Of a stretch of DNA of 64,000 bases, positions 4,176 to 19,568 are shown in pieces. The first letter of the stretch is position 1; each line of letters opens with the position of its first letter. The notes under the pieces are model-generated. The model was not told the origin of the DNA, ran no database searches, and saw only the letters and a list, made by a program, of their open reading frames with translations. The stretch covers positions 62,001 through 126,000 of IMG/VR virus record IMGVR_UViG_3300021511_000003; one strand, written 5' to 3'. The position numbers and the translations under genes were made by a program.

Positions 4176-4301
4176 TCCTGAAAGTAGAAAATGTAATAGG
4201 TACTTGATAAAGTAAGAATTGAACTTACCGTCTTTTGCGTATAAGGCAAATACCCCACCATTGGGATTTTTTATCTGAAATCACAAATAAGTCTTTCAGG
4301 A
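4176..4301 (-). ncRNA. Scaffold RNA module carrying a tRNA-Ile(UAU)-like cloverleaf (4206-4275)
   Basis: Outer helix TCCTGAAAG/CTTTCAGGA; inner TGTGAT/ATTACA; insert GATAAA/TTTATC stem, D arm TCCC-AATGGT-GGGG, anticodon arm TTTGC-CTTATAC-GCAAA, T arm GTAAG-TTCAATT-CTTAC; no CCA. Confidence 0.8.
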
Positions 4302-4327
4302 AACTGTAAATTGTATAATAAAAAGAA

Positions 4328-4406
4328 ACTAGAAGTTGTATATGTAATATGATGTTTTGGCTTCTTCTCAAAAGAATAAAACTGAAATTACAAAAAGTCT
4401 TCTAGT
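4328..4406 (-). ncRNA. Scaffold RNA module with a short hairpin insert
   Basis: Outer ACTAGAAG/CTTCTAGT; inner TGTAAT-TTCA...ATTACA; insert GTTTT..TTCTT-loop-AAGAA..AAAAC. Confidence 0.7.
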
Positions 4407-4417
4407 GTTAAAATACA

Positions 4418-4548
4418 CCCGAAGTAGTAAGTGTATTAATTTGTCATACCACAGATGGCGTGGTAGAAGGGACTCGAACCCTATACGTTGCTTTATAAGA
4501 GCAGTGCTGAACCAATCAGCGATCAGAAAATACGTCTAAGTCTTCGGG
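4418..4548 (-). ncRNA. Scaffold RNA module carrying a circularly permuted tRNA-Ile(UAU)-like domain
   Basis: Outer CCCGAAG/CTTCGGG; inner GTATT/AATAC; D arm GCTGA-TTGGT-TCAGC, anticodon arm TGCT-CTTATAA-AGCA, T arm AGGG-TTCGAGT-CCCT, then CTACCAC-G-CCA-TCT-GTGGTA. Confidence 0.8.
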
Positions 4549-4560
4549 AAAAATATAAAA

Positions 4561-4619
4561 TGGAGTTATAAATGTAATTGGTTGATTTAACAATAATTTG
4601 AAATTACATAAATTCTCCA
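4561..4619 (-). ncRNA. Minimal scaffold RNA module (first in the array)
   Basis: Outer TGGAG/CTCCA; inner TGTAAT-TTCA...ATTACA; about 20-nt AT-rich insert. Confidence 0.65.
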
Positions 4620-4660
4620 AAATGTTCTTAAACATAATAAATCATTATTCTTATTCAGAT

Positions 4661-4674
4661 ATTAATATATATAG
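4661..4674 (-). promoter_or_regulatory. Putative phage promoter class A (CTATATATATTAAT)
   Basis: Identical 14-mer at four intergenic sites, each oriented toward the downstream gene. Confidence 0.6.
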
Positions 4675-4693
4675 TTATTATATTTTTAAATGA

Positions 4694-4969
4694 TTAAGTA
4701 ACATCTACCATAGCAGGTTTTCTTGTATTATCTAAATCAAAAATAATCTTTTTATTTGAAAAATGATTTGCGGTATTCTTGATGATTTGTTTCATACCTT
4801 GTGGCATAAAATTATCAGTATAATATAATTGAAGTCCATCTTTGAAGCTAAATGCAATACCATCATGTGTTTCATTAACTTCAACTAAATCACTTCTTTT
4901 GATTTCAAGATTCATAGTACCTTTTTTAATGACAATCATTGATTCCTCAGTCATGTTATTCTCCTTCAA
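4694..4969 (-). CDS. Hypothetical protein
   Basis: ORF at the end of the RNAP operon; SD favours a start at MTEES. Confidence 0.7.
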   Translation of the reverse strand: MKENNMTEESMIVIKKGTMNLEIKRSDLVEVNETHDGIAFSFKDGLQLYYTDNFMPQGMKQIIKNTANHFSNKKIIFDLDNTRKPAMVDVT

Positions 4970-5570
4970 TTAATTTCAAGTATATTTCATTATTAAGTTC
5001 TTTTGATTTCTTACAAAACCATTCTGTGATTTTATCTTTATTATATGTTCTTAAAAAATTAGTAATTAACCAAGAAAAGTCTTGAGAATTTAACTGTTCT
5101 TCAATTTCAAAAATAATTTCATTTTGATTTTGTTTACAAATCTTTTCAATATGAAATGAATCCAATTCTGGATCTAGATATGACCATATTTCTATAATAA
5201 AATTTTTATGGTCATATTCAACAAACTCCAAAAATTTTAAGATATTTATAATATCAGATTCGCTATTTGTATTAACGATTATAGATGGTTCATAATTATA
5301 CACTTGCTTAACTCTTTTTAATATTGATTCTGCCAGAACCTGTTTTTGTTCTATTGGGTATTTTATCATATCAGGATATACTGATAAATATTCTTCTTTA
5401 AAATCTGATTTACCAATATTACGAATAATTGTTATAAAGAAATATTCTTTCAATGCTTCTTCTTCAACGGGATACCCCAATTCACTTTCCACTTCTGCAT
5501 CATCATAATCTACTTCTGGCTCTTCAATAGAGTTACCAAGAAGTATTTTTAGATCTTCTGATTCAAACAT
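4956..5570 (-). CDS. Hypothetical acidic protein in the RNAP operon
   Basis: 204-aa ORF coupled to the end of the beta gene. Confidence 0.75.
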   Translation of the reverse strand: MFESEDLKILLGNSIEEPEVDYDDAEVESELGYPVEEEALKEYFFITIIRNIGKSDFKEEYLSVYPDMIKYPIEQKQVLAESILKRVKQVYNYEPSIIVNTNSESDIINILKFLEFVEYDHKNFIIEIWSYLDPELDSFHIEKICKQNQNEIIFEIEEQLNSQDFSWLITNFLRTYNKDKITEWFCKKSKELNNEIYLKLIEGE

Positions 5571-5572: not shown

Positions 5573-8500
5573 TTACCTCGTTAACATTAATGATATAAAA
5601 TATGAATTTAATAAATCTTTTGCTGGAGATATTTTTGGTTCTTTATAACCAGCATTGCCATTTTGAATAATCTCTGCCATTATTTTATCTCTTGTTATAT
5701 AATCATCAGATAATGGACCCATAAATTCAGCTAAAACATGTGGACAATTATATGAAATAAAAGAATAAGTATCAAGTTCACCCAGTCTTTGACCTCCATC
5801 ACGTTTTTTTCCACTTGTAGGTTGTGATGTTTTACCTGTTGTTGGACCGGTACCACGTGCATATATTTTCGCTTCGCCAAGATGTTCGAGTTTTGACATA
5901 TACATATAACCAACAGCAACTTCAAAATGGGTTTTAGTATTATATTTAGGCAAGAAAAGTTTATATTTTGTTTTCAAGCCTAATACTTTCAATGATTTTT
6001 TAATCTCAGTATGACCGGGTGCTTTAAATGGTGGTATAATAATTGGATAAAAACCAGTCTTTTTAACCTGGTCAATCATTTTTACATATTGTGTTGTTGT
6101 CAAACTTGATAAATTTCTAACAAGATTTTCTGTTGCTTTTTTATTTGGTGACATATCAAGATTTACAAATACTTGTTTTATGAGTGCAATTGTTTTTGGT
6201 TTTGTCATTGTTGGTAATCGTTTACCTAATTCTCTTGCCATCAATCCACAATACATTTCATATAACTGACCCATATTCATTCTACTTAAAAGACCGAGAG
6301 GATTTAAAATTGTTTCAATGATATCACCGTTAGGAAGTCTTGGCATTAATTCATCGTTTTCAATTAGTGAGATGATTCCCTTATTGCCATACCTATTCGC
6401 TAATTTATCACCAAGTCCAACTCGTAATTCCTGTTCAATTCTAAATCTTACTAATACTCCTTTGATTGTTTCACCTTTGACCGTAAACGATTCTTTTGCT
6501 GGTTTCATTGATTTAAGATTTGTTTTTGTAATCAACTCTTTTAATTGTGGAAATAGTTCTTCATCAACATTAGAATAAACTTCAATATCAACAATTTTTC
6601 CACCAGGACTCTTTTTAATAAATTGTCCAGTAAACATATCAGTTGTTTCATCATCATCGAAACCAATAATATCTTCAATATCACCAAGAGTCTTTCTTAA
6701 TAATGGTTTTCCTTTTTCAATTTCATCACCAATTTCTGCAATATATAAAAGCCTATCATTAGGAGCAATTAATATTTCTTCTTCAATACCATGTAATGAA
6801 GTCAATTTATCCTGTTCTACAACTGATTTACTAATAACTGCACCATCTTCAAAATTATATCCATCATATGGCATAAGAGCGCATAATAACGGTCTTCCAA
6901 GTGAAATTGATCCATTAGACATACATGCACCTTCTGCAATAACATCACCCTGTTTGACGGTTTCACCCACCTTAATCAAAGGGTTAAATACACTTAATGT
7001 ATTTTTTCCAGAACCAGATTTTAAATGAACCGGTGTTATATCAATTATCTTTTTTGTTTTACCACATTGAATTGTTATTAAATCCTTATGAACAGAAGAA
7101 ATTTTACCATTACAAGGAGATTTTTTCACAAAGTTTTTTGATAAAACACCTGTTAATATTGATTCATATCCAGATTGAACAACAGGGGGTTGTGGATTTC
7201 TTAAAGGCAACATTTGTTTTGCCTGATTTGAAAGCATAATAACCCTTGCACCATCTGTATTTTCAAGGAATGGAATCATTGATGTAGTCGTTGAAAGCAT
7301 TCCACTTCCTTCATTATCTGATATATCTTTTGTTGTAAATAAACCTCGTGATGACGATATCAATGCGTCTATGGTTAACTGTTGAACAATTCCAATATTG
7401 TCACTCTCGGATGTATCAAGAGGATCAAGATTTCCAAAATATGAATTATGTAAATTACGAGCATCATTATGAATAGCTCTTTTATCAGGAATACCTCCAA
7501 CCTTTTTACCAGCAGGAGACACTCTTGTCATAGTTGACATTTCTTCAAGAGGATTTGCGTATTCCATATCAACAACTAATTCAGTCATTAAAAAATCACT
7601 TAATACTTTAGTTGGTACTATTGTTAATTTTGCTTCTGTATTGCCTGATAAAACTTGCTCTTTATATACTGTGTAAGCTGCAAGAATTTGTTTTTGTGCT
7701 AAATGGACAAGAACTTCTGAATTTCTAATTCGTTGATTACTAATATCATTTCTTGCAATATAAAACCCATCAACAACTTTTTCTGTCATATATTTCATAA
7801 TCATTTCAAGATCAGTTGGTAATTGTTTATTTAATAATACTTGCTTAGCAACAGGATCAACAATATTTTGAAGATTTGAACTAATAAGAAATGTTGAGTT
7901 TAATCTACCTGATAATTGAATTATTAAATCTTCAAAATATTTATGTGAAGCAAATTCGGCATCACTTTTATATTGTTGTACTTTACCATGAATGAATGAT
8001 TGGCATAGTTGTTTTTGTAAATCTGTTTGGACGTTTTGGAATATAATATATTTTTCGTTGTTAATTTTACATGAGAATTTTTCACTTGGTTTATTATCTG
8101 ACAATATATATTTAATATTATATTTTTTTAAGGTTTCATCAAAACCAAAACTAAACGCAAGCAAAAATATTAATGGCATTTTATAAGACATGAAAGCTTC
8201 AAGATATTTTTCACGTCTTAGCTGTTTAACATATATTCTAAAAACAGAATATGAGCTTTCAAATCTTGATTCACCTGGTGATGGAAATGTAATTGGATTT
8301 TGTACAATTTGATTGATCAAACATTTTTGTTTACCATTCAGTCGAAACACTCCAGTATCAGGATCAATTTTTGGCAACTCCATTTTTATTTCATGTTTGT
8401 TTCCAAATTCATCTGACATATTAATTGTAGCAATTGATAAATCAGATCTCATTACTTCACCCATTCTTTGAGGTTTATCAGCAAGTGTAATCCCTTCAAA

Positions 8501-9649
8501 TTTCATAGGAATCTCTTTTGATTCTAAAACTTTGAATGAGTTTGTTAAATCCTTTTTCAGATTTGTTTTGAAATCAACCTGGCGTTTTTCATATACATGT
8601 TCAGGAGATTTATTATCAACCATTATTTGTGGACTATATACCTGAACTCTTGGGTCAGTACTTAGATTTACAGTTTTAACAGGTTTTAACAGTTCACTTG
8701 AAAAGTTTTTATCTATTGCTTTTAATGCAACTTTCTTTCTTGATTTTGGTATCTGTCTTGCAATAGCGGTTGATTTAGATTTATCGCCACTGACTCCATA
8801 CAATATCGCTGAAGTTGCTATATCTCTCACATCATCGCCTGACGCATCACCAGAGGTTATTTTAATAATATCATCTGGATTTGTTTTTAAATATTTTTCA
8901 ACTGCGCCAGCAACATTTTTTATATTTTTTGGTTCAATATCAGTTGAAATAGCTTTGCTTATAATTCTTGCAGCCTTTTTTGTTTGGTTTTCAACCTCTT
9001 CTTCTGCTGGAATACTTTTAATAGTTCTTATATAGTGGGTCAATCTTGCGAATTTATATTCATTATCTTTCACGAGTAAACGATATTTTGATGAACTAGC
9101 ATCTAAATAATTTATTATCATATGATCAAATAAAAAGTTTCCATTTTTCATATCTCGTATAACAGGAAATATTTTTTTGTCAATAAATGGATTGATTTCT
9201 TTTGAAATATCAACAGAATAAAATAATATCTTTTGATAATTATCTGGAAAAGCATCTGACATTTGCTTCAAAATATTTGTAATAAAAAATCCAGCTCTTT
9301 GTCTATACGTAGTAGGCTTATAAACTGTATCAATAGCATTTGTATATTGTGATAAATCTACAATAACATTCTTCCCTTGCGGTATATTTTGTTGCATTGT
9401 ATAAGGAATTAATCCAAGAGCTTTATACATTTTTACAAATTGTGCTGTCATTCTTGTACGTGGAACCTGTGTAACTGGACTTGCAACAATACGAAAATCA
9501 ACTCTTTTTAAATTCAATTTTAGGTAATCTGTAATGAAATTAGAATTTTCAGAAAAATATATAATAAGATATGGTTCTTTTGGATTTTGCGGAAACCTCA
9601 CACCATCCGTTACATGCGTATATTGTTTCCATGATTTAAATTGAATCAC
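5573..9649 (-). CDS. rpoB: DNA-directed RNA polymerase beta subunit (phage type, N-terminal extension)
   Basis: GVFRLNG, YFGNLDPLDTSESDNIG, GYNFED, GDKLANRYGNKGII, LNPLGLLSRMNMGQLYE, KLEH, QPTSGKKRDGGQRLGELD. Confidence 0.95.
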   Translation of the reverse strand: MIQFKSWKQYTHVTDGVRFPQNPKEPYLIIYFSENSNFITDYLKLNLKRVDFRIVASPVTQVPRTRMTAQFVKMYKALGLIPYTMQQNIPQGKNVIVDLSQYTNAIDTVYKPTTYRQRAGFFITNILKQMSDAFPDNYQKILFYSVDISKEINPFIDKKIFPVIRDMKNGNFLFDHMIINYLDASSSKYRLLVKDNEYKFARLTHYIRTIKSIPAEEEVENQTKKAARIISKAISTDIEPKNIKNVAGAVEKYLKTNPDDIIKITSGDASGDDVRDIATSAILYGVSGDKSKSTAIARQIPKSRKKVALKAIDKNFSSELLKPVKTVNLSTDPRVQVYSPQIMVDNKSPEHVYEKRQVDFKTNLKKDLTNSFKVLESKEIPMKFEGITLADKPQRMGEVMRSDLSIATINMSDEFGNKHEIKMELPKIDPDTGVFRLNGKQKCLINQIVQNPITFPSPGESRFESSYSVFRIYVKQLRREKYLEAFMSYKMPLIFLLAFSFGFDETLKKYNIKYILSDNKPSEKFSCKINNEKYIIFQNVQTDLQKQLCQSFIHGKVQQYKSDAEFASHKYFEDLIIQLSGRLNSTFLISSNLQNIVDPVAKQVLLNKQLPTDLEMIMKYMTEKVVDGFYIARNDISNQRIRNSEVLVHLAQKQILAAYTVYKEQVLSGNTEAKLTIVPTKVLSDFLMTELVVDMEYANPLEEMSTMTRVSPAGKKVGGIPDKRAIHNDARNLHNSYFGNLDPLDTSESDNIGIVQQLTIDALISSSRGLFTTKDISDNEGSGMLSTTTSMIPFLENTDGARVIMLSNQAKQMLPLRNPQPPVVQSGYESILTGVLSKNFVKKSPCNGKISSVHKDLITIQCGKTKKIIDITPVHLKSGSGKNTLSVFNPLIKVGETVKQGDVIAEGACMSNGSISLGRPLLCALMPYDGYNFEDGAVISKSVVEQDKLTSLHGIEEEILIAPNDRLLYIAEIGDEIEKGKPLLRKTLGDIEDIIGFDDDETTDMFTGQFIKKSPGGKIVDIEVYSNVDEELFPQLKELITKTNLKSMKPAKESFTVKGETIKGVLVRFRIEQELRVGLGDKLANRYGNKGIISLIENDELMPRLPNGDIIETILNPLGLLSRMNMGQLYEMYCGLMARELGKRLPTMTKPKTIALIKQVFVNLDMSPNKKATENLVRNLSSLTTTQYVKMIDQVKKTGFYPIIIPPFKAPGHTEIKKSLKVLGLKTKYKLFLPKYNTKTHFEVAVGYMYMSKLEHLGEAKIYARGTGPTTGKTSQPTSGKKRDGGQRLGELDTYSFISYNCPHVLAEFMGPLSDDYITRDKIMAEIIQNGNAGYKEPKISPAKDLLNSYFISLMLTR

Positions 9650-9821
9650 TAGTTTCCCCTCTGCAAATTATATTTGTTAGTTTTCCTGTTGAACATTCAT
9701 TTTGATGACCTTTTTTAATATATTCGGGACAATTACTTGAATGTTTACTATAACACCATTTACCATTTTTAAATTGATAATTAGCTTCTTGACTACAACC
9801 ATAATTGCATAGTTGTATTAT
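9636..9821 (-). pseudogene. Miniature HNH-family remnant: N-terminal Cys motif fused in frame to the C-terminal tail
   Basis: Reads IIQLCNYGCSQEANYQFKNGKWCYSKHSSNCPEYIKKGHQNECSTGKLTNIICRGETSDSI*; ATA at the start position. Confidence 0.75.
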
Positions 9822-12800
9822 TCCTTTTTTTCTTCCACAAGTGTACCAGTAAGGACTTTTTCAAGAACAGATGCTTCCCCAGTTTCATCAGTAATCAATC
9901 CAGTTTTTATAGCTTCGTTGATATTTTCGAAGGCCAGTCCCTGAATAAAACTTGTCTTGAATACAATCTGTTTAATATTAATCATAACAGGATCCCATTT
10001 ACGTCCAAGTCTTGCAGGAATACTCTGATTGGCTCTATCTCTTAATGATTGTGATAATAAAATTTCAATATGAACACTATCCATATCTCTAAGATCACCA
10101 TATATTTTAAATAATTTTAAATATAAATGATTAGCATCTTTATAAATTTCACGCCCTCCAATTAGTCTTTCAACATATTGGATTTGTTTTTTCATTGCTT
10201 CTGTTTCTGTTGGTACTTCTAATATTGTACTATGTTTCTTATAATATAATTTGATTGTTTCTTTATTTTCTTCGATTTCATATATTTGAAATTTAATTGG
10301 ATAATCAAGAATGATATTATAGATTGAATCTGAAAATTCAACTATAGCTACAGAAGCTCTTATAGACAAAATAGTTTTTGTATCATTAAATGTCAAATCT
10401 CCTGATACTGGGTAATCTCCTTTTGAAATTGTAACTGTACAATCATCGTTACATGCCAATACATTATCATTTTGTATTAAAGTCTTTCTTACAATCTTTT
10501 CATCTACAAGAGCATCATTCTGAATAATATCGTCAATGATATTTCTTGAAACAACACTTACTGCACCGCCTGTGTGGAACGTTTTCATAATAGTCTGTGT
10601 TCCAGCTTCACCAATAAGCTGTGCTGCCATTACACCTGCATATGGACTTCGATGACGTTCTAATAGTTTTCCATAACAAGTATGACATAGTTTTGAAGAT
10701 TCACAAAATACGGGTGTTCGTAAATGAATTTGATCTCCAATCTTATAATTTACAGGATTAAATAATTGAGGTTTACCATTTTCAAGAACATAACGACCAT
10801 TCAGTCTAGTTGATAGTTTTTTAGTTAACCTTAGATCAAGAGTCCTTTTTGTTTTACAATCTTGTAGATTTGGATCAATCTCAACACTGTTTAAAACATA
10901 TGCTAATTTTCTTGCCATGTATCCAGTATCTGCAGTATTTAAAACTCTATCAATAATACCACTTCTTGCACCAGACGCTGCTGAAAAATATTGACTATTT
11001 GTTAAACCATCCGAAAACGAACCATCTATTGGAGGTAATACTTTTCCTGTTGGATCAGATACTAAACCTTTAGCAACAAAAATTTGTGTTGGTTGTCCCC
11101 AACCTTTACCTCCACCTGATTCAATTAAATCATAAACACCACTTCCTTTCAAATGTTCTATTAACATTACTTGCATTTTTTTCAATAATACATCGGCTTC
11201 CTCTGTTGATGAATTTTTCAATTGTTTTTTAAGCTCTAAAATTTCAGGTGGTAATTGAATATCATCTAATGTAATACTTGGTGAAATGATTGTTGAAAAT
11301 TTAAATGAAATATCTTTTAATTTTGAAAAAGATTTAATTGCTTGTTCCTGACCATATTTTTTAAGAATTGGAGAAATCATTCCATTAACAACTTTCTTTG
11401 TCACTATATCATTATAAAATGGAGTATCCAATGGAAATACACTATTAAAAAGAGCTTTTCCCATTGTTGTAGTTTTCTTTCTATATACTACAGGAATATA
11501 TGGATCAACAGCATTATCTAAATCTTTTTGTGTTACTGCAATAGGAGGAGTTGTTCTTTTTATATCTTTTGTGATTGTAAAAAGTCCAACACACATTTCT
11601 TTTGAAAGTTCAAAATTTACAGATTTATCATTATCACCACTTTCAGATCTCATCATTTTAGTTTTTGCTTCAAGTTGTGCTTCATTCGTAATTGGATGAA
11701 AAATTGCCATAGTATCACCATCAAAATCAGCATTGAATCCACCAACTTGTAATGTACATAATTGCACTGTATTCCCTTTAATTAAAATTGGATTAAATGC
11801 TCTAATAGATTCAGCATGTAAACAAGGGTCACGTTTTGCCAATACAACACGATTCATCATAGCAACTTCTGTTGCTTCAAATACAATATCATATAGTTCT
11901 TTTGGTATTTTATCTCCACTTTTAATAGACTTGAAAACTTGTTTAACACCATCAACAGAAAGTTCAAATTTTGTAAACTTTTTAACTTCATCTGATAATT
12001 TCTTTTTATCAACCCGACTTGAAAATAAACGATGTAATATAAATGGTTCAAATAAACTAACAGCCATCCGTAATGGTATCCCAATTTCATTTACTTTTAA
12101 ATCTGGACCTGGTGTAATAACGGCACGACCAGAAAAATCTGTACGTTTACCAAGCATTTGTGATCGAATTAAACCACGTTTTTTCTGAATTAATTTTCTA
12201 ATAAAATTGTCATGATTAATAATTGCTTTTTGTAATTCAAAATTCAACAAATCAAATAATGGTCCACTTTTTGCAGCACTCCTTATCTGATGTGCTCGGC
12301 GTATAGTTGTGATATAATAATCATTTAAAGGATCAATAATCCACATTCCATTTTCATCTTGATATGCATCTCGTTGAATTGGTGGTATTACTGGTAAAAC
12401 ATCTAAAAATAACGTATTGTTTTCATATGATTCTTTTATCTTTTTAATGAATTTATCTCGAGTATCAGACCCCCCTCTAAATTTGATTTTTGGAAGTAAC
12501 TTCATAAATGATGAAATTCCAGTAACACCTCTTGAATCTTTTTGAAGAAGCCCTTTTGAATCAACTGAAAAGGTTTCTTGCGCAGATATAAATAATTCAA
12601 TTTGTCTATCAAGTTGAATAAGAAGTATATATGCAGATGGGTGAATAACATAAGCATTTAAATTAATATATGAAAATGTTTTCTTTCGTTCAGTAGATTC
12701 TTCGGATCCAAAAATTATTTCAGAAAAAAGACCATCAGGATGAAACTCCCCAGGTTTGGAAAATAATTCCGTTGTTGTTACAGGGGTCAATCCTTTTTTG

Positions 12801-12829
12801 AAATTATTTATATTCAGAAAATTAATCAT
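9818..12829 (-). CDS. rpoC: DNA-directed RNA polymerase beta' subunit
   Basis: GLFSEIIFG, LPVIPP, LGKRTDFSGRAVITP, catalytic FNADFDGDTM, TADTGYMARKL, GEAGTQTIMKTFHTGG. Confidence 0.97.
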   Translation of the reverse strand: MINFLNINNFKKGLTPVTTTELFSKPGEFHPDGLFSEIIFGSEESTERKKTFSYINLNAYVIHPSAYILLIQLDRQIELFISAQETFSVDSKGLLQKDSRGVTGISSFMKLLPKIKFRGGSDTRDKFIKKIKESYENNTLFLDVLPVIPPIQRDAYQDENGMWIIDPLNDYYITTIRRAHQIRSAAKSGPLFDLLNFELQKAIINHDNFIRKLIQKKRGLIRSQMLGKRTDFSGRAVITPGPDLKVNEIGIPLRMAVSLFEPFILHRLFSSRVDKKKLSDEVKKFTKFELSVDGVKQVFKSIKSGDKIPKELYDIVFEATEVAMMNRVVLAKRDPCLHAESIRAFNPILIKGNTVQLCTLQVGGFNADFDGDTMAIFHPITNEAQLEAKTKMMRSESGDNDKSVNFELSKEMCVGLFTITKDIKRTTPPIAVTQKDLDNAVDPYIPVVYRKKTTTMGKALFNSVFPLDTPFYNDIVTKKVVNGMISPILKKYGQEQAIKSFSKLKDISFKFSTIISPSITLDDIQLPPEILELKKQLKNSSTEEADVLLKKMQVMLIEHLKGSGVYDLIESGGGKGWGQPTQIFVAKGLVSDPTGKVLPPIDGSFSDGLTNSQYFSAASGARSGIIDRVLNTADTGYMARKLAYVLNSVEIDPNLQDCKTKRTLDLRLTKKLSTRLNGRYVLENGKPQLFNPVNYKIGDQIHLRTPVFCESSKLCHTCYGKLLERHRSPYAGVMAAQLIGEAGTQTIMKTFHTGGAVSVVSRNIIDDIIQNDALVDEKIVRKTLIQNDNVLACNDDCTVTISKGDYPVSGDLTFNDTKTILSIRASVAIVEFSDSIYNIILDYPIKFQIYEIEENKETIKLYYKKHSTILEVPTETEAMKKQIQYVERLIGGREIYKDANHLYLKLFKIYGDLRDMDSVHIEILLSQSLRDRANQSIPARLGRKWDPVMINIKQIVFKTSFIQGLAFENINEAIKTGLITDETGEASVLEKVLTGTLVEEKKE

Positions 12830-12981
12830 TATACGCATATCCTTTGTGCCAAATTACCTGTAGAACATTCATCTTTATGACCATATTTATAGTGACATCT
12901 TTCACATACAGACCATGCTAAATCTGGATCTAACTTAAAAAAATGGGTTGCTTCTTTGCCACATCCATCACAAATAATCAT
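12829..12981 (-). CDS. 50-aa miniature HNH-family derivative
   Basis: MIICDGCGKEATHFFKLDPDLAWSVCERCHYKYGHKDECSTGNLAQRICV*; TAATG overlaps at both ends. Confidence 0.75.
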   Translation of the reverse strand: MIICDGCGKEATHFFKLDPDLAWSVCERCHYKYGHKDECSTGNLAQRICV

Positions 12982-13448
12982 TATTTATCATCAATTGCAT
13001 TTGTTTTATTAATATCAAGATAAGATTTAATTTTTTTGAACATCCTCGTTACTTGTGCTTTTTTTGCAGCTGTGGATGCCGGTTTGATCACAGTTTTTGA
13101 AAGGACATTATGTCTATGATTTAATTGATTCAAAATACCTTGAAGTGTATTAGTATCAAATTTTCCTTTTGGATCATTCATTAATCTTTGAACAAGTTTT
13201 AATGCAACTGCAATTACTTTTTTATCCTCCATACCCATACGATTACAGATGGGTATAAGATATGGAGAAGTGTTTCTACCAATTGGTAACAACTTTAGAA
13301 AACATTTTGGCTTATCACCGTATAATCTATCTCTCAAATCCTTCTTTAGTAAATACGATAAACTATCTTCGGGATTAATTAAATCATTTGCCTTTCTAAT
13401 AAGTTCCGAAAGATGTTTTATTTCTTCATTTAATTGGTCGCTCATCAT
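12981..13448 (-). CDS. Hypothetical protein, first gene of the RNAP operon
   Basis: 155-aa ORF, SD GGAGG. Confidence 0.75.
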   Translation of the reverse strand: MMSDQLNEEIKHLSELIRKANDLINPEDSLSYLLKKDLRDRLYGDKPKCFLKLLPIGRNTSPYLIPICNRMGMEDKKVIAVALKLVQRLMNDPKGKFDTNTLQGILNQLNHRHNVLSKTVIKPASTAAKKAQVTRMFKKIKSYLDINKTNAIDDK

Positions 13449-13486
13449 TTAACCTCCGATAACTGGATGTAATATCTTATTTTATA

Positions 13487-13494
13487 TTTGTTCT
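13487..13494 (-). promoter_or_regulatory. Putative phage promoter class B (RGAACAWA)
   Basis: AGAACAAA about 40 nt upstream of the start; the motif recurs before many genes. Confidence 0.45.
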
Positions 13495-13510
13495 TAAAAT
13501 ATAATGGCAA

Positions 13511-13545
13511 AAAATATGTGGGGATAAAATTTCCCCACATATTTT
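13511..13545. terminator. Rho-independent terminator-like hairpin
   Basis: AAAATATGTGGGG/CCCCACATATTTT stem with T/A tails. Confidence 0.75.
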
Positions 13546-13627: not shown

Positions 13628-13954
13628 TCACATACTTTTAAAGCGTATTACATAAATATTTGTTTCTGGAAATTTATGCCAGGTTTTTACATCCACCAGT
13701 AACATTTCAGAAATTTGTTTGTCTTTTTTATCAAGTAATTCCAAAATAATTTCGTCATTGGTATTAACTTTTTTTGTTTGATCATATTTTGTTATTTTAA
13801 TTCCATCGACAACAATACTATATTGTGTTTTATATAAAAATTCTTTTATAGATAAACTATTTTTATAATCTTCGTTTAATTCTATGCTACATGAAGGAAG
13901 AATAAAAATAAAAAACAGTAGTGAATAAAATATTTTTCTCATTCGCATCTCCAT
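13628..13954 (-). CDS. Putative lipoprotein
   Basis: Hydrophobic signal peptide ending LPSC. Confidence 0.6.
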   Translation of the reverse strand: MEMRMRKIFYSLLFFIFILPSCSIELNEDYKNSLSIKEFLYKTQYSIVVDGIKITKYDQTKKVNTNDEIILELLDKKDKQISEMLLVDVKTWHKFPETNIYVIRFKSM

Positions 13955-15399
13955 TAAAAATCAGCATTCATCAATTTTGTCATTTCATCAATTTCTTTTT
14001 TCATACCTCCTGAAAAGTATGCTGTAAAGAATTTGATCATACCATTTTCGATTTTTGAAAGAGGAATACCACCTAATCGTTTTCCTGTTAAAATATCACA
14101 AAAATCAACTCGAGAAACTCTACCGATAAAATGACATAATAATGTATGAGGTAATATCTTTGTAGTAAATCCAAAGAAATTTTGTGTTTCTTGTTGTGTT
14201 TTCAAATATTCATGCACAGCTTTAATTTTATATGTTGTACTCATTGATGGGCTTTTCATTGGGTAAAAGTTTAATAAAGTAAATAAGTCTTTATAGTCTG
14301 TACCGAATACTTGTCTAAATAAAACTTGGATATAAACTGCAATCACCGCTGTATGCTCAGGGGAAAGTGTTCTGAAATGATGGAACGGTATATGAGTCAT
14401 TTGTGATAATATTGGAAATACTAATGTTTCTGCCAATGGAGAAATAAAATTAATTTCTGATGCTCGTTCATGGAATGATATAATGAATTCGTCATCATCA
14501 ACTTTTTCAGTTGACATAGTTGATTGCCTTTGAAGTAATTCATATATTTTTTCATAAGCAATGCTTTTTAATCTTCCAAGAGTATCATTATAACTATAAG
14601 TCTTTAAGTTATCTGTATTAATACCTTGAATATCTTCTGTTGAAATACTATCATCATAAACAATAGAACCTTTATAAACTGATCGTAAAAACCATTTAAC
14701 TGATTCATCAATAACTCCAACAAAATAAGTAATTGGATTTTTATCTATTTCACAAAGAATCAGAATATTATTCATAATGAAATTGAAAATTTCAATAACA
14801 TGAACTCCAATATCTTTTCCTTGCACATTCTTGATATATTCCCACATAAATCTATCTGTTAGATTATATCTGAATGTTTTTGTTTTGATAACATCATAAA
14901 TCTTTCTAATAATATCTGTTTCAACAATATCTGAAGCAAATTGGTTATAAACTTCTCGATGTAGTTGTGCTCCCAATTTCAATTTTTCATTGTTTGAAAT
15001 CACTGAATAAATTTTAAGATAGCTTGATAGTCTAATAATTTGTTCAATTTCATCTGGTTTAAAAAGTATGGAGTTTTTCTTGACCTTTGTCATATCAACA
15101 AACTGACTATAATCAAAAGTTAAAGAATCCATATAACTATCAACATAATTTTTAATTTGAGGAATACTATCGACTACAGCTTTTGATCGCAGATTTTCAT
15201 CATGGCAATCAGTTAAAAAATTAATAAACCAGTTGCTGAATCCTTCTACGTTATGTTCAGCAACTCTCTCGATGAATTTGGTCACAATAAAATATTTATT
15301 AGTGACTGAAGAAGGTGAGAGAAAGAGTTTTATTGGTTCAACATCATCATCTACTACAACTGACCATACTTTTGGTCCATTCTGCTCAATTCGTAACAA
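13954..15399 (-). CDS. Hypothetical protein (~480 aa)
   Basis: Long ORF; SD AAGGAGG favours a TTG start near 15399 (ORF track gives 15432). Confidence 0.75.
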   Translation of the reverse strand: MLRIEQNGPKVWSVVVDDDVEPIKLFLSPSSVTNKYFIVTKFIERVAEHNVEGFSNWFINFLTDCHDENLRSKAVVDSIPQIKNYVDSYMDSLTFDYSQFVDMTKVKKNSILFKPDEIEQIIRLSSYLKIYSVISNNEKLKLGAQLHREVYNQFASDIVETDIIRKIYDVIKTKTFRYNLTDRFMWEYIKNVQGKDIGVHVIEIFNFIMNNILILCEIDKNPITYFVGVIDESVKWFLRSVYKGSIVYDDSISTEDIQGINTDNLKTYSYNDTLGRLKSIAYEKIYELLQRQSTMSTEKVDDDEFIISFHERASEINFISPLAETLVFPILSQMTHIPFHHFRTLSPEHTAVIAVYIQVLFRQVFGTDYKDLFTLLNFYPMKSPSMSTTYKIKAVHEYLKTQQETQNFFGFTTKILPHTLLCHFIGRVSRVDFCDILTGKRLGGIPLSKIENGMIKFFTAYFSGGMKKEIDEMTKLMNADF

Positions 15400-15511
15400 A
15401 ATAAATTGACCTCCTTTGATGTTGTGAGACATTCATTGATAAAAAATACCAATGAATACCTCATGGACCTTTATGAGTTGTGGTTATAAAGATCCAATTC
15501 AAAAAATAACG

Positions 15512-15570
15512 AAACACTTATATCTTTCATTAGTTATTAATATATATAGACATGGAATATATAAGTGTTT
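15512..15570 (-). promoter_or_regulatory. Class A promoter motif (15536-15549) flanked by a perfect 12-bp inverted repeat
   Basis: AAACACTTATAT (15512-15523) and ATATAAGTGTTT (15559-15570). Confidence 0.55.
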
Positions 15571-15590: not shown

Positions 15591-16502
15591 TTATATTTTA
15601 CACACCAAATCTTTTAAGACTTGCTCAAATATTTCTTTTGGTACTGTTGTTGTGCCTGATTGTGTTACTACATAAGCAGCGCATTTATTTGCAAGAATGG
15701 CTGCTTCGTGTATAGAATAATTCATTGATAAACATAAACCCATAACAGCCACAACCGTATCACCGGCACCTGAAACATTGTAAACTTCAACGGGTTCTGA
15801 CATAATTGAATATTCTTTATTATTCAACTTATTATATAAAATCATTCCATGTTTGCCTTTTGTTTCAAGAATAAATTTTACATTTTTTAATGAATATTTA
15901 GATGATAGTTTCATGATTTTCCATTCTTTTTCATTGGGTGTAATCATGTAAGCATCATTATATAAAAAGCCATTAATTGGTTTTGGATCAACAATGATTT
16001 TTGTATTCAGAGTTTTAAGAAATTCCATTAGTTCTTTTGTAATCATTCCTTTTGCATAATCCGAAACTATAATAACATCATATACTTTTCTACAATCTTT
16101 AAGGAAAACTTCAATTGCTCTTTTTGAATCAATTTTCGAGATTGTTTCTCTATCAACTCTTAACATTTGAACTTTACGGTCATCAGCAATAATTCTTTCT
16201 TTTACAATTGTTTGTTTTGAACCGTATGAACATAAATTCTTTGCGCCTATATTATCCAATTCATTAATTATCAACCCCCCATTGATATCATTCGAAATTG
16301 AGGACATACAATCAACTTGTGCTCCGAGTTCTCTAAGATTTCTACAAACATGGCCACAACCTCCCAAAGTATAATATTCTTCTTTAACGTGAACAACAGG
16401 TACAGGAGCTTCTGGGCATATTCTTTCAACTTTACCTATAATATATTTGTCAAGCATTATATCGCCAACAACTAAAACTTTCACATGACCAGTTTCTTTC
16501 AT
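15591..16502 (-). CDS. hldE: D-glycero-D-manno-heptose-7-phosphate kinase (HldE/RfaE domain I, PfkB family)
   Basis: VLVVGDIMLDKY, ERICPEAPVPVV, SDYAKG, VDPK, ITPNEKE, VYNVSGAGDTV. Confidence 0.9.
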   Translation of the reverse strand: MKETGHVKVLVVGDIMLDKYIIGKVERICPEAPVPVVHVKEEYYTLGGCGHVCRNLRELGAQVDCMSSISNDINGGLIINELDNIGAKNLCSYGSKQTIVKERIIADDRKVQMLRVDRETISKIDSKRAIEVFLKDCRKVYDVIIVSDYAKGMITKELMEFLKTLNTKIIVDPKPINGFLYNDAYMITPNEKEWKIMKLSSKYSLKNVKFILETKGKHGMILYNKLNNKEYSIMSEPVEVYNVSGAGDTVVAVMGLCLSMNYSIHEAAILANKCAAYVVTQSGTTTVPKEIFEQVLKDLVCKI

Positions 16503-16566
16503 ATACACCGCCTTTTTAAAATTTTCGTGGCAAAAAAGAGTATCGAACTCATTTTTTGTAAAGTGT

Positions 16567-16683: not shown

Positions 16684-17421
16684 TTACAGTTCATTCAACA
16701 TTTTCTGAATTTCGGCATTTACGAAAGCATTACCTTGCAACCAAGGACGATCTTCTGGACCAGCGGATCCACCGGATATTCCGGTACCACCAGTTGCAAT
16801 TGATGTATCAGAGGCCTTGGCATATGAAAAACCAATACCCCATCCGAATGCTTCAATTTTACGATGGGCACCTTCAGCTTTAAATACAAGCACATTGGCA
16901 CCGTTTTGCATGGCTTTCAGAGCCATTGCTCCAACTAATTGTACTGAGTTGGTTTTCCCGTTTTTGGCAGTACCGTTGATAAAAGCGACATGCGTTCCGG
17001 TGTTTTTAATTCCCTTAATACGATCAGGGTCGATTACAAGCAGGATACGACGATCATTTTTTTCACGTCCATTAACGCATTTTTCGGGGTTCACTTCAGC
17101 ATATGTAATACGGGTCTCCCCCCATTTAGCCATATTTTCAAGGGCACCTTCGGAAAAGACTTTTCCAAATTCGAGAATGTTTTTGATTGTAACGAAATCG
17201 CCATCCGGAGTCGGTGTAGTGAACCATCCGGGTTGACCAGGAATCGGAACGGAACCGGCATTCGGGAAGGCACGGTCAGTAGCTTCGTATGTATTTATAC
17301 TGTGATCATCAATGGATGCAGTAACATCATCGACATTTGCTTCGGATGTTGTATCCGCCATTGCGGGTATATAAAATGCAACAAAAACAAGGCTCATCAT
17401 AATTACAATAATCTTTTTCAT
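16684..17421 (-). CDS. Secreted protein of unknown function
   Basis: Signal peptide MKKIIVIMMSLVFVAFYIPAMA; higher GC than its flanks. Confidence 0.75.
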   Translation of the reverse strand: MKKIIVIMMSLVFVAFYIPAMADTTSEANVDDVTASIDDHSINTYEATDRAFPNAGSVPIPGQPGWFTTPTPDGDFVTIKNILEFGKVFSEGALENMAKWGETRITYAEVNPEKCVNGREKNDRRILLVIDPDRIKGIKNTGTHVAFINGTAKNGKTNSVQLVGAMALKAMQNGANVLVFKAEGAHRKIEAFGWGIGFSYAKASDTSIATGGTGISGGSAGPEDRPWLQGNAFVNAEIQKMLNEL

Positions 17422-17474
17422 AAGATTTAATCTCCTTTTTCATTTGTATGATATTCGTTTTACAATTAGTAAGA

Positions 17475-17513
17475 ATAGAACCCTAAGATTAGAACTCTAT
17501 CTTAGAGTCCTAT
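17475..17513 (-). terminator. Long intergenic hairpin (terminator or mRNA-stabilising)
   Basis: ATAGGACTCTAAGAT/ATCTTAGGGTTCTAT pairs fully only on the minus strand (G-U pairs). Confidence 0.6.
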
Positions 17514-17539
17514 CTTTTAATAATTATCGTTAATGATTA

Positions 17540-18556
17540 TTAGTTCCCTCCTACAACGCCATTGGCAGTTGCATGTGAAGAACCGGAAACGGAAACGTGG
17601 CTTCTGTCATTATGAACACCGATGTCGGCATTCAGAGTGGCATTACCGGATCCGTGAGTTCCACCAACAAAACTGAAGTTAGAAGCTCCACCTGCATAAG
17701 TTCCACCACGAGCAATGACTCCACCAACTCCACCACTACCCTGAACTATGCTGTACTGCATACCATGAGAAGCAAAGGTATTGGCTTCGGTATATGTACG
17801 GGCACTGATACTACGATGTGAACCATAAAAGTCACCGGTTACCATTGTATGACCTTCGACATTGGCACCACCATTGATCCAGTTGATATCTCTTACATAC
17901 CCACGACCACTTTCATAATCATAGTCGGAAGCATAAAACTCTCCCATGGAACCATTTCCACCACCAACCCATGAACCACTTGGATAACCCTCTTCCATTG
18001 CGTTGTGATACTGACTTACCATACCACCAACATAGACGGTGCCTTGAACAACTTCACGATTACCACATTTACCAGAGGCTATACCCCAAGTGTCAGCTTC
18101 ACCATAAAAAGAGGCACCGGCACCGGCACGAGATGTTCTGCTGTAATGATCATTGGTGTATGACCATGCATCAGAATGACTTGTAGCATTCATTCCGCCT
18201 GATTGATCGGCAGGATTGTCAATAAGATCATAACGAGGGACTGGAATCCAGATTCCACAACAAATATGTACCCAACTGGTTCCAACATATTGCAGAGATT
18301 GACCAGCAGCGTTAGCATATGTGGAAACATCCCCACCTGCATAACCTCTGGCAGATGAGTGGGCATCGTCATTATAAGCTCCCGGGTAACCGGAATAGGA
18401 ATTGGAGTTATCATTAGATGGTGCTTCACCGTAGTAATAACCGGTAGCGGTCAAAGGGCCTTCACCTGGAGGGCAATTTCCGCCTGGGCATGCCATAACA
18501 CTACCAACTGCAATTAACGTAATCATAATAAATGCAATAAACAATTTTTTAAACAT
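17540..18556 (-). CDS. Secreted Gly/Ser/Tyr-rich protein
   Basis: Signal peptide ending VMA; low-complexity beta-type composition; GC-rich codons. Confidence 0.75.
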   Translation of the reverse strand: MFKKLFIAFIMITLIAVGSVMACPGGNCPPGEGPLTATGYYYGEAPSNDNSNSYSGYPGAYNDDAHSSARGYAGGDVSTYANAAGQSLQYVGTSWVHICCGIWIPVPRYDLIDNPADQSGGMNATSHSDAWSYTNDHYSRTSRAGAGASFYGEADTWGIASGKCGNREVVQGTVYVGGMVSQYHNAMEEGYPSGSWVGGGNGSMGEFYASDYDYESGRGYVRDINWINGGANVEGHTMVTGDFYGSHRSISARTYTEANTFASHGMQYSIVQGSGGVGGVIARGGTYAGGASNFSFVGGTHGSGNATLNADIGVHNDRSHVSVSGSSHATANGVVGGN

Positions 18557-18609
18557 AATTCAATTCTCCTTTTTCACATGTGATAAAATTAATTAAAATA
18601 GTACGGGTG

Positions 18610-18870
18610 TTATTTAGATATATCTTTTTCTTCTTCAACTTTCAACTTCTGTTGCTCGACGTTTTGCTCTTTTGACGCCAATGGAACAATAACAGCTTGT
18701 TGACCATCTCGAGAAGTGATAACTCTGCTATCTGCCTTTTGTTGTTCGACGGCAGCAAGTTTAAAGGTGTCATAATATCCAATATGTTTATAATTGGATT
18801 CAAGTGCAAAAGCAGGAGCAGTGACCATCAAACACATCAATAAAACAATTAGTATCGATATTATTTTCAT
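18610..18870 (-). CDS. Small secreted protein
   Basis: Signal peptide ending AFA; SD AAGGAG. Confidence 0.7.
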   Translation of the reverse strand: MKIISILIVLLMCLMVTAPAFALESNYKHIGYYDTFKLAAVEQQKADSRVITSRDGQQAVIVPLASKEQNVEQQKLKVEEEKDISK

Positions 18871-18907
18871 TTAAAGTTTCGCTCCTTTTAAAAATGTTTT
18901 AAGTAAT

Positions 18908-19545: not shown

Positions 19546-19568
19546 GTATATGAGTTATAAATAAAAAA

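What the first reader, a model, noticed from the sequence alone, without database searches (positions are those of the whole stretch)
5573..12829. Unsplit, streamlined beta'/beta RNA polymerase in reversed gene order inside a T4-like gene set
Seen: each subunit is one ORF and beta' is upstream of beta. Beta' (~1000 aa) has no Cys ligands for the N-terminal zinc ribbon after GLFSEIIFG. Beta has about 350-400 extra N-terminal residues before the first conserved motif. No alpha or sigma is recognisable in the window. Established: phiKZ-like phages use split subunits, and bacteria have rpoB before rpoC. Inference: a deep-branching phage RNAP in which the beta extension or the flanking ORFs (4694, 4956, 12981, 13954) may replace alpha, omega or sigma.
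Basis: partly seen in the sequence, partly recalled or inferred. Interest (0 to 1): 0.6.

Follow-up and report, generated by a model that had tools for sequence, protein, structure and literature searches.

The report
Unsplit virion-type phage RNA polymerase operon
This stretch of an uncultured jumbo phage with a T4-type capsid encodes one of the phage's two own beta'/beta RNA polymerases; the gene pair belongs to the already published 'mReC' lineage, but it appears to be the unsplit counterpart of the virion-packaged polymerase of phiKZ/AR9-like phages and sits next to a sigma-like factor gene, which connects two groups of phage polymerases that had not been linked.

Summary
Window 9818-12838(-) is a roughly 1003-1006 aa beta' with NADFDGD and no N-terminal zinc ribbon. 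Window 5573-9649(-) is a 1358 aa beta with a 334-aa N-terminal extension, and beta' lies upstream of beta.

1. The 223-kb phage record has a second unsplit pair 36 kb away: beta' of 903 aa with a zinc ribbon, and beta of 1000 aa without an extension.
2. The lineage is the published mReC group. Relatives' contigs, with both pairs, are listed in that paper's supplement.
3. The flanking ORF at 13954-15432 folds like AR9 gp226 and phiKZ gp68, the sigma-like specificity subunits of jumbo-phage polymerases (Z 18.3).

Profile scores and two trees place the window's pair with the virion polymerases of AR9, phiKZ and phiR1-37, and the second pair with the non-virion polymerase. Neither pair nests in Bacteria. 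Zinc-ribbon loss and the beta extension are shared with those virion enzymes.

Two conserved promoter-like motifs exist. Class A heads the window's polymerase operon. Class B resembles AR9 early promoters and precedes the sigma-like gene.

Best model: a late-made, packaged early-gene polymerase. Packaging and promoter assignment are inferred, not shown.

The parts
9818..12838 (-). beta' subunit of the window's polymerase ('set 2'), 1006 aa as an ORF, probably 1003 aa from the ATG at 12829. It has NADFDGD and the C-terminal Cys cluster, and it lacks the N-terminal zinc ribbon.
5573..9649 (-). beta subunit of set 2, 1358 aa, GTG start. Rpb2_3 spans residues 695-762, Rpb2_6 spans 848-1283, Rpb2_7 spans 1285-1356.
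8648..9649 (-). N-terminal extension of beta (residues 1-334). Residues 12-210 form a P-loop-NTPase-like alpha/beta domain without a Walker A motif; residues 216-316 form a helical bundle. It is conserved at 39-77% identity to the query across the 29 homologues aligned (251 homologues were found with residues 1-480) and in a distant orthologue.
9650..9817 (-). 168-nt spacer between beta' and beta, absent in relatives where the two genes abut. It reads as a Cys-rich fragment resembling the N-terminus of a homing endonuclease and has no start codon.
   Evidence: read directly from the sequence
12981..13448 (-). o155, first gene of the operon. It is conserved in 7 related loci (34-76% identity) but absent in the most distant orthologous loci. 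Function unknown.
13480..13495 (-). Class A promoter-like motif (consensus TTWAGAACAWAAWATAAAT) about 40 nt upstream of o155. It is conserved at this position in 8 of 8 genomes.
13514..13542 (-). GC-rich hairpin followed by a T run (intrinsic-terminator-like) that separates the upstream unit from the polymerase operon. Relatives have an equivalent hairpin.
13954..15432 (-). o492, a sigma-like subunit candidate that folds like AR9 gp226 and phiKZ gp68. Its likely start is 11 codons downstream. 563 homologues were found; the 120 listed are 61-100% identical. It lies next to beta' even in loci with only 33% beta' identity.
15536..15549 (-). Class B promoter-like motif (consensus CTATATATATTAATWANTGAA) upstream of o492. 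It is conserved in several relatives, including the distant locus L106.
13628..13954 (-). o108, a small ORF between o492 and the terminator. It is poorly conserved (found in 1 relative).
4956..5570 (-). o204, directly downstream of beta. It is conserved in 7 related loci (30-65% identity), has an acidic N-terminal part, and has no known family.
4694..4969 (-). o91, a small conserved ORF after o204 (39-80% identity). A class A-like motif lies at 5037-5052, inside the end of o204.
4661..4674 (-). Class B motif just after the operon, heading the next minus-strand genes.

Best explanation
[quoted passage not shown] It sits in a phage with a T4-type capsid that belongs to the published mReC lineage.

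The phage carries two paralogous polymerases.
- Set 2 (this window) is virion-type. Its beta' has no zinc ribbon and its beta has a 334-aa N-terminal domain.
- Set 1 (36 kb away) is non-virion-type.
- The phage also carries a gp226/gp68-like sigma-like subunit, o492.

Proposed mechanism, by analogy with phiKZ and AR9:
1. Set 2, with o155 and perhaps o204 and o91, is transcribed from a class A promoter together with structural and replication genes.
2. It is packaged into the head and injected.
3. It starts the next infection at the AT-rich class B promoters.
4. Class B drives early genes, including o492.
5. o492 then equips the set-1 enzyme to read class A promoters.

Shown:
- gene structure, the paralogy, and the conserved operon and motifs;
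- the fold of o492;
- the grouping with virion enzymes.

Inferred: packaging, timing, and which enzyme reads which motif.
For: A second pair exists and both pairs co-occur.
- The second pair.
- Both pairs are present in 5 of 5 large related records, including a complete 277-kb genome.

Profile scores, checked against the record annotations, separate the two sets.
- The set-2 beta' profile scores 138 bits on AR9 virion beta'N, against 25 bits for the set-1 profile.
- The set-2 beta' profile scores 86 against 23 bits on phiKZ gp180, a head protein.
- The set-2 beta profile hits phiKZ gp178 (head protein) at 113 bits and AR9 virion betaN. The set-1 profile hits neither of these.
- The set-1 profile alone hits AR9 non-virion betaN.

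Trees (LG+C20+F+G4):
- beta'N: set 2 plus jumbo vRNAP, support 92/99.
- beta: set 2 plus vRNAP 87/96; set 1 plus AR9 nvRNAP 94/92.
- Bacteria are separate at 100/99 in both.
- The rival topology gives p-AU 0.043 on beta.

Shared derived traits:
- The zinc ribbon is missing in the window's beta', its orthologues, AR9 gp144 and phiKZ gp180. It is present in set 1, Carin-5, bacteria and phiKZ gp55.
- The N-extension model matches, in BFVD, a 1393-aa protein (E 5e-6, prob 1.0) and a 921-aa PBS1 protein (E 1e-4).
- phiR1-37 g099 is 1393 aa and is annotated 'RNA polymerase beta subunit, phage structural protein'.
- hhalign aligns extension residues 22-181 with g099 residues 26-207 at 26% identity.

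o492:
- 7s01_A (gp226): Z 18.3 over 414 residues, Foldseek E 8e-6.
- 8que_B (gp68): E 3e-4.
- Sigma region-2 domains follow at Z 5-6.

Motifs:
- Class A occurs 6 times against 0.14 expected; class B occurs 4 times against 0.30 expected.
- Class A is conserved before o155-beta' in 8 of 8 genomes, after a terminator hairpin.
- Class B resembles AR9's annotated early promoters, AAATATATATTAT.
- Class A contains AACA, as does the AR9 late consensus (PMC7598289).
Against: - No virion or expression data exist for this uncultured phage.
- o492 lies beside set 2, not set 1, in every relative. In phiKZ the gp68 gene, by my recollection, lies near its partner genes, so adjacency argues that o492 serves set 2.
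- No class A or B motif was found near the set-1 operon, in this genome or in 80 related loci. Early expression of set 1 is therefore unsupported.
- Class A precedes both the DNA polymerase and the capsid gene, so it is not a clean 'late' class.
- The AU test on beta'N does not reject the rival topology (p 0.17), and the beta test is only marginal.
- phiKZ and AR9 branches are long.
- The identities of the BFVD hits G4KK38 and the PBS1 protein rest on length and organism, not on a name.
Confidence: 0.6

Rival explanations
1. Set 2 is not packaged. It is an intracellular middle or late polymerase whose specificity subunit is the adjacent o492. Together they read one of the two motif classes, while set 1 or the host enzyme handles the rest.
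For: - o492 lies immediately upstream of beta' of set 2 in all relatives, including loci at 33% identity.
- Only one o492-like gene exists in the genome.
- Class A, which heads the set-2 operon, also heads replication genes.
Against: - o492 and the polymerase operon are separate units with different promoter-like motifs and a terminator between them.
- Set 2 shares zinc-ribbon loss and the beta N-domain with enzymes annotated as head or structural proteins.
- gp226 and gp68 belong to non-virion enzymes, and set 1 is the non-virion type.
Confidence: 0.25
2. The two pairs arose by a duplication inside this lineage. The resemblance of set 2 to phiKZ/AR9 virion enzymes is then convergence or a long-branch artefact.
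For: - In the full-length beta' tree without phiKZ/AR9 sequences, sets 1 and 2 are sisters.
- The AU test on beta'N does not reject the rival topology (p 0.17).
- phiKZ and AR9 branches are very long.
Against: - Both subunits give the same pairing independently.
- Long-branch attraction should pull the phiKZ/AR9 v and nv sequences together, and the opposite is seen.
- The AU test on beta gives p 0.043 against the rival.
- Two discrete shared characters support the pairing: the deletion of the zinc ribbon and the N-terminal beta domain.
Confidence: 0.12
3. The genes are a recent capture of host rpoB and rpoC, or bacterial contamination of the contig.
For: Pfam domains are the ordinary RNA polymerase ones. 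The best bacterial matches reach 27-31% identity.
Against: - The 18 sampled Bacteria (9 in the later trees) form one clade that excludes both sets (99 to 100/99 support).
- Identity is equally low to all phyla in the 80 loci returned.
- Gene order is reversed, and no alpha is found.
- Flanking genes are phage genes, and more than 100 homologues sit on viral contigs of up to 309 kb.
Confidence: 0.02

Closest known systems
mReC: multi-subunit RNAP-encoding Caudovirales (Weinheimer & Aylward 2020, PMC7481178)
   Same: It is the same lineage.
- It consists of IMG/VR contigs with full-length beta and beta', a gp23-type capsid protein (PF07068), and a polymerase outside the cellular clades.
- The paper's supplement lists contigs that I found as relatives. 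Examples are Ga0180431_10000031 with a 1364/1005 aa pair marked _a_, Ga0180432_10000164 with a 1017/903 aa pair marked _b_, and WOR52_10000459 of 277,131 bp.
   Different: - The main text does not discuss two pairs per genome, gene order, the zinc ribbon, the beta extension, accessory factors or promoters.
- It deliberately left phiKZ-type enzymes out of the trees, so the link to virion and non-virion polymerases was not made.
Virion RNA polymerase of phiKZ (gp178, gp180 and others), AR9/PBS1 (gp144, gp188, gp263 and others) and phiR1-37 (g099)
   Same: - Both subunits group with these enzymes in trees and profile scores.
- beta' lacks the N-terminal zinc ribbon.
- beta carries a long N-terminal domain.
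- There is no alpha or omega.
- beta' genes precede beta genes where they are linked.
   Different: - Here each subunit is one polypeptide, not four or five pieces.
- The capsid is gp23-type, not phiKZ-type.
- No tubulin is found in this record or in a complete relative.
- Packaging is unproven.
- Sequence identity is only about 25-31% in the conserved parts.
AR9 gp226 and phiKZ gp68, the sigma-like fifth subunits of non-virion polymerases (PMC9209446)
   Same: - o492 has the same size (about 480 aa against 464 and 521).
- The whole-length fold matches gp226, and the C-terminal domain matches gp68.
- It has a sigma-2-like middle part.
- Residues 247-273 form a low-confidence linker where gp226 has its sigma-finger.
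   Different: - There is no detectable sequence similarity.
- The gene sits beside the virion-type pair.
- Core binding and promoter recognition are untested.
Single-polymerase phages with unsplit or nearly unsplit subunits: Cobetia phage Carin-5, Yersinia phage YerA41, Vibrio phage Va2
   Same: - Gene order is beta' before beta.
- Subunits are unsplit in Carin-5 (1083 and 927 aa).
- A small gene sits directly upstream of beta'.
   Different: - Only one beta' match was found in the records checked.
- Carin-5's upstream gene is annotated as a sigma factor and its beta' keeps the zinc ribbon.
- Carin-5 and YerA41 form their own long branch in the trees.
Bacterial RpoB/RpoC core enzyme
   Same: - It has the same double-psi beta-barrel catalytic core, NADFDGD, fork, hybrid-binding and clamp domains.
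- It keeps the C-terminal Cys cluster of beta'.
   Different: - Gene order is reversed.
- There is no alpha, omega or sigma70-family gene.
- There is no N-terminal zinc ribbon.
- beta has an extra N-terminal domain.
- It lies outside the bacterial clade.

Membership tests
mReC phages (Weinheimer & Aylward 2020) | Contig encodes both beta and beta' of at least 800 aa, with NADxDGD in beta' | tested here: met
   beta' is 1006 aa with NADFDGD and beta is 1358 aa. The criteria are quoted.
mReC phages (Weinheimer & Aylward 2020) | The polymerase clusters apart from cellular homologues | tested here: met
   Bacteria are monophyletic without the phage sequences.
mReC phages (Weinheimer & Aylward 2020) | gp23-type major capsid protein (PF07068) | tested here: met
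   PF07068 scores 117.7 bits at G000:C1:199353-200516, with a PHROG major head protein match.
mReC phages (Weinheimer & Aylward 2020) | Close relatives are among the contigs listed by the authors | tested here: met
   The contigs of L018, L019 and G002 appear in the supplement with matching protein lengths.
Jumbo-phage virion RNA polymerase (phiKZ/AR9 type) | beta' and beta group with gp180/gp178 and gp144/gp188 and not with non-virion subunits | tested here: met
   Profile scores; trees at 92/99 and 87/96. AU tests give 0.17 and 0.043, so support is moderate.
Jumbo-phage virion RNA polymerase (phiKZ/AR9 type) | Subunits split into four or five polypeptides | tested here: not met
   There is one ORF per subunit here and in most relatives.
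Jumbo-phage virion RNA polymerase (phiKZ/AR9 type) | Present in the virion and injected | not testable with these tools
   The phage is uncultured. Only the homologues are annotated as head or structural proteins.
Jumbo-phage virion RNA polymerase (phiKZ/AR9 type) | Initiates at a conserved AT-rich element of about 10 nt before early genes | tested here: inconclusive
   The class B motif exists, is conserved and resembles AR9 early promoters. Which enzyme reads it is unknown.
gp226/gp68 sigma-like subunits | Two-domain fold with a sigma-2-like part, a finger linker and a gp68-like C-terminal domain | tested here: met
   7s01_A scores Z 18.3 over 414 residues; 7ogp_B scores Z 8.2 for residues 272-479; sigma-2 domains score Z 5-6 for residues 120-255.
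gp226/gp68 sigma-like subunits | Binds the polymerase core and confers promoter specificity | not testable with these tools
   This needs biochemistry or a reliable complex model.
Chimalliviridae (nucleus-forming phiKZ-like phages) | phiKZ-type capsid protein and PhuZ tubulin | tested here: not met
   The capsid is gp23-type. PF00091 gives no match in this record or in the complete 277-kb relative. Chimallin was not tested.
Bacterial RpoB/RpoC | Nested within a bacterial clade, rpoB before rpoC, zinc ribbon in beta', alpha and omega partners | tested here: not met
   Omega was not searched.

The most novel reading that the evidence does not exclude
mReC phages preserve unsplit forms of both jumbo-phage polymerases (virion-type and non-virion-type) together with the sigma-like fifth subunit.

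The virion/non-virion duplication would then predate the split between gp23-capsid and phiKZ/AR9-type jumbo phages. The fragmented subunits of phiKZ-like phages would be secondary. They would not be relics of a pre-cellular multi-piece enzyme.

These two-subunit enzymes would also be far easier to reconstitute than the phiKZ and AR9 ones.
Probability: 0.5. Interest if true: 0.75.

Novelty: new member of a known kind. Interest (0 to 1): 0.55.

Why it matters
Reviews state that nobody knows whether the virion and non-virion polymerases of jumbo phages arose by duplication or by two captures. They also state that the origin of these enzymes remains a mystery (PMC7598289, PMC13282480). The mReC study left them out of its trees.

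If the pairing found here holds, one genome carries unsplit counterparts of both enzymes plus the sigma-like subunit. That would have three consequences.
- It dates the duplication before the divergence of very different phage groups.
- It argues that subunit splitting is derived.
- It offers a simple two-gene system for reconstituting a virion-type polymerase, whose promoter recognition and packaging are still not understood.

As a plain gene finding it is not new, because the pair is a member of a lineage published in 2020.

Tried and rejected
- **Flanking ORFs, family searches.** Pfam and PHROGs on 4694, 4956, 12981, 13628, 13954, 2464, 1488 and 544 found no family.
- **o155.** The protein atlas gave nothing. 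A Pfam scan of all 8 o155 members gave only noise.
- **PDB profile searches.** Profiles of o492, o155, o204 and o91 gave no meaningful match.
- **hhalign comparisons.** o155 against AR9 gp148 ('sigma factor, HTH') and against the Carin-5 sigma factor showed no similarity. The beta extension against the AR9 virion betaN piece showed nothing.
- **Extension fold.** Foldseek against the PDB gave only generic alpha/beta hits at TM about 0.2.
- **Complex prediction.** o492 with the N-terminal 470 residues of set-1 beta' returned no answer. This is neither support nor evidence against binding.
- **Trees.** The first beta' tree with the mixture model (68 rows by 1001 columns) did not finish in two runs. 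I replaced it with a smaller LG+G4 tree and with two small mixture-model trees.
- **Promoter motifs near set 1.** I searched for class A and B motifs near the set-1 operon in this genome and in 80 related loci and found no consistent site.
- **phiKZ beta'.** The Pfam Rpb1_2 model did not find phiKZ beta', so family profiles built here were used.
- **'Moraphages'** (PMC12619734) were considered as the lineage and rejected because they lack polymerase genes.
Full report
**1. What is there.**
The window is bases 62001-126000 of a 223,015-bp IMG/VR virus record that CheckV estimates at 71% complete. Two long ORFs lie on the minus strand.
- The ORF at 9818-12838 (1006 aa) carries Pfam Rpb1 domains 2, 3 and 5.
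- The ORF at 5573-9649 (1358 aa) carries Rpb2 domains 3, 6 and 7.
- The beta' sequence has NADFDGD and the C-terminal Cys cluster.
- Beta' is upstream of beta.

In this genome a 168-nt spacer separates the two genes. In relatives the genes abut.

**2. A second polymerase.**
The same record holds another pair 36 kb away, in the same order.
- Beta' is at G000:C1:35637-38348(-), 903 aa.
- Beta is at 31964-34966(-), 1000 aa.

I call this pair set 1 and the window's pair set 2. The paralogues are 27% identical. Two differences stand out.
- Set-1 beta' has CxC...CxxC exactly where the window's beta' has a 28-residue gap after GLFSEIIFG. The zinc-ribbon loss is therefore real and specific.
- Set-1 beta begins at residue 335 of the window's beta, so the extension is 334 aa.

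Both sets occur in 5 of 5 large related records, one of them a complete 277-kb genome with terminal repeats. They also occur together on two further contigs.

**3. Which phage.**
- The window carries UvsX, a gp44-type clamp loader, a Dda helicase, RNR, a Cas4-like nuclease and many HNH genes.
- The genome has a gp23-type capsid protein and a family-B DNA polymerase.
- No sigma70 region 2 or 4 and no alpha is detectable.
- More than 100 metagenomic beta' homologues (53-77% identical) and 251 beta homologues exist. None comes from a cultured phage.

This is the mReC lineage of Weinheimer and Aylward (PMC7481178). Their supplement lists my relatives' contigs with a 1364/1005 aa pair marked _a_ and a 1017/903 aa pair marked _b_. 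Their main text does not discuss the following:
- two pairs per genome;
- gene order;
- domain changes;
- accessory factors.

They also excluded phiKZ-type enzymes from their trees.

**4. Not bacterial.**
A scan of one genome per prokaryote species returned only ordinary rpoC loci at 27-31% identity, from many phyla. In a beta' tree of 57 rows, Bacteria form one clade (support 99). Sets 1 and 2 form another clade (support 100) with the long-branched Fusobacterium phage enzyme.

**5. Kinship with jumbo-phage enzymes.**
I built profiles of each set and searched all ORFs of AR9 and phiKZ. I then read the records' annotation.

| Target (as annotated) | Set-2 profile | Set-1 profile |
|---|---|---|
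| AR9 virion beta'N | 138 bits | 25 bits |
| phiKZ gp180 (structural head protein) | 86 bits | 23 bits |
| phiKZ gp178 (structural head protein) | 113 bits | no hit |
| AR9 virion betaN, N-terminal 932-aa piece | 92 bits | no hit |
| AR9 non-virion betaN | no hit | 71 bits |

Two mixture-model trees agree with this pairing.
- On beta'N, set 2 groups with the virion enzymes at 92/99.
- On beta, set 2 groups with the virion enzymes at 87/96, and set 1 groups with the AR9 non-virion subunit at 94/92.

The rival topology (phiKZ/AR9 virion and non-virion together) is not rejected on beta'N (p-AU 0.17). It is marginally rejected on beta (p 0.043). Long-branch attraction would favour the rival topology, so the observed pairing runs against the expected artefact.

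**6. Two shared characters.**
- **Zinc ribbon.** An alignment of N-termini shows it missing in the window's beta', its orthologues (including one at 32% identity), AR9 gp144 and phiKZ gp180. It is present in set 1, Carin-5, a Flavobacterium and phiKZ gp55.
- **Beta extension.** The model has pLDDT 85. It shows a P-loop-like alpha/beta domain without a Walker A motif, followed by helices.
  - Among predicted viral structures, its best matches are a 1393-aa protein (E 5e-6) and a 921-aa PBS1 protein (E 1e-4).
  - phiR1-37 g099 is 1393 aa and is annotated as 'RNA polymerase beta subunit, phage structural protein'.
  - hhalign aligns extension residues 22-181 with g099 residues 26-207 at 26% identity, including the invariant F-x-E-N-S stretch.
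  - That these two BFVD entries are g099 and the AR9-type virion betaN is my inference from length and organism.

The extension is thus a hallmark of virion-type beta. It is not a mobile domain, and it is not needed for alpha-less assembly, since set 1 lacks it.

**7. Flanking genes.**
The block o492 - (o155) - beta' - beta - o204 - o91 is conserved across relatives. In the most distant loci, o492 directly precedes beta'.

o492 has 563 homologues; the 120 listed are 61-100% identical, and none is annotated. Its model (pLDDT 79) gives these matches:
- AR9 gp226 over the whole length (7s01_A, Z 18.3, 414 residues; Foldseek E 8e-6);
- phiKZ gp68 (8que_B, E 3e-4; 7ogp_B, Z 8.2 for the C-terminal domain);
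- then sigma region-2 domains, including T4 gp55 (Z 5-6).

This pattern matches the published description of gp226. o155, o204 and o91 remain unexplained.

**8. Promoter-like motifs.**
Two motifs are enriched upstream of genes.
- **Class A** (TTWAGAACAWAAWATAAAT) occurs 6 times in the window against 0.14 expected. It sits before o155, after a terminator-like hairpin, in 8 of 8 genomes. It also precedes the capsid gene, the DNA polymerase, HNH genes and a tRNA.
- **Class B** (CTATATATATTAATWANTGAA) occurs 4 times against 0.30 expected. It precedes o492 (also in the distant locus L106), Dda, a NAMPT-like gene and small unknown ORFs.

AR9's annotated early promoters read AAATATATATTAT. The AR9 late consensus is AACA-N6-TA. 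The resemblance of class B to the former and of class A to the latter suggests, but does not show, which enzyme reads which.

**9. Model and its weak points.**
By analogy with phiKZ and AR9, set 2 would be made from class A, packaged, injected and used at class B. o492 and set 1 would then read class A. Four things argue against this.
- o492 lies beside set 2, not set 1.
- No class A or B motif lies near set 1.
- Class A is not purely late.
- No expression or virion data exist.

I put about 0.8 on the statement that the window's enzyme is the virion-type orthologue. I put about 0.45 on the full mechanism.

**10. Verdict.**
- The gene pair is a member of a published lineage.
- As far as the searched literature shows, four things appear to be new:
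  - the link of the two mReC pairs to virion and non-virion jumbo-phage polymerases;
  - the sigma-like neighbour;
  - the shared derived traits;
  - the two conserved motif classes.

Noticed in passing
G000:C1:31964-38348 (outside the window; L009:11964-18348): A second unsplit beta'/beta pair (903 and 1000 aa). It keeps the zinc ribbon, has no beta extension, and groups with the non-virion polymerase of AR9. A FolE2-type GTP cyclohydrolase lies directly downstream and a ThiF-like gene upstream.
   Followed up: yes
window 4661-4674, 15536-15549, 19532-19545, 51193-51206 (class B); 5037-5052, 13480-13495, 31148-31163, 33676-33691, 44098-44113, 54571-54586 (class A): Two strongly over-represented promoter-like motifs. 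They often sit back to back at divergent gene junctions elsewhere in the genome, for example at C1:596/628, 7477/7514 and 180607/180624.
   Followed up: partly
window 9650-9817: A 168-nt insert between beta' and beta, absent in relatives. It reads as a Cys-rich peptide like the N-terminal repeat of homing endonucleases but has no start codon, so it is probably a decayed mobile-element remnant.
   Followed up: no
P0014, P0084; L104:8001-12023, L105:7992-11925; L113:5136-8960; P0227: Orthologues of the window's subunits are repeatedly invaded.
- Some beta' proteins are about 1390 aa and carry an intein Pfam domain.
- In two loci beta' is cut into 779 + 230 aa by an inserted ORF.
- One beta' has an insertion at the HTGG motif.
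- One beta is 1720 aa with a LAGLIDADG domain.
Such invasions could be how split subunits arise.
   Followed up: partly
window 35721-36734, 43193-44080, 55712-56719, 57926-59023; also C1:24086-25024, 197964-198836, 217612-218466: There are at least seven paralogous HNH homing-endonuclease genes. Several are directly preceded by a class A motif.
   Followed up: no
L115-L147 (IMG/VR contigs found with the beta' alignment): Another group of viral contigs encodes beta and beta' fused in one ORF of about 2000-2500 aa, with beta first. In the beta' tree most of them form their own clade beside, not inside, Bacteria; one falls elsewhere.
   Followed up: no
G000:C1:31007-31894 and C1:187023-188441: A FolE2 GTP cyclohydrolase I and a weak queuine tRNA-ribosyltransferase-like protein hint at 7-deazaguanine modification of the phage DNA. 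This could matter for promoter recognition, as uracil does in AR9.
   Followed up: no
L300:1645-2106 (AR9 gp148): In AR9 a 153-aa gene annotated 'sigma factor, HTH domain' lies just upstream of the virion beta'N gene, in the same position as o155 here and as the sigma factor of Carin-5. No sequence similarity to o155 was detectable.
   Followed up: partly
window 4262-4693: A gap of about 430 nt with no minus-strand ORF of 45 aa or more (a 60-aa plus-strand ORF lies at 4357-4539). It holds a class B motif followed by a class A-like motif and may hold a small gene or a non-coding RNA.
   Followed up: no
window 16684-29811: Upstream on the same strand lie genes that, in relatives, carry weak or faint PAAR and gp5/gp27-like (Phage_base_V) Pfam matches and a confident Amidase_2 match. 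A tail-tip module therefore neighbours the polymerase block. A PfkB-family kinase (15591-16508) lies in between.
   Followed up: partly
G000:C1:165155 (outside the window): A class A motif sits directly in front of a tRNA-like sequence (GCATAGCTCAGTCGG).
   Followed up: no
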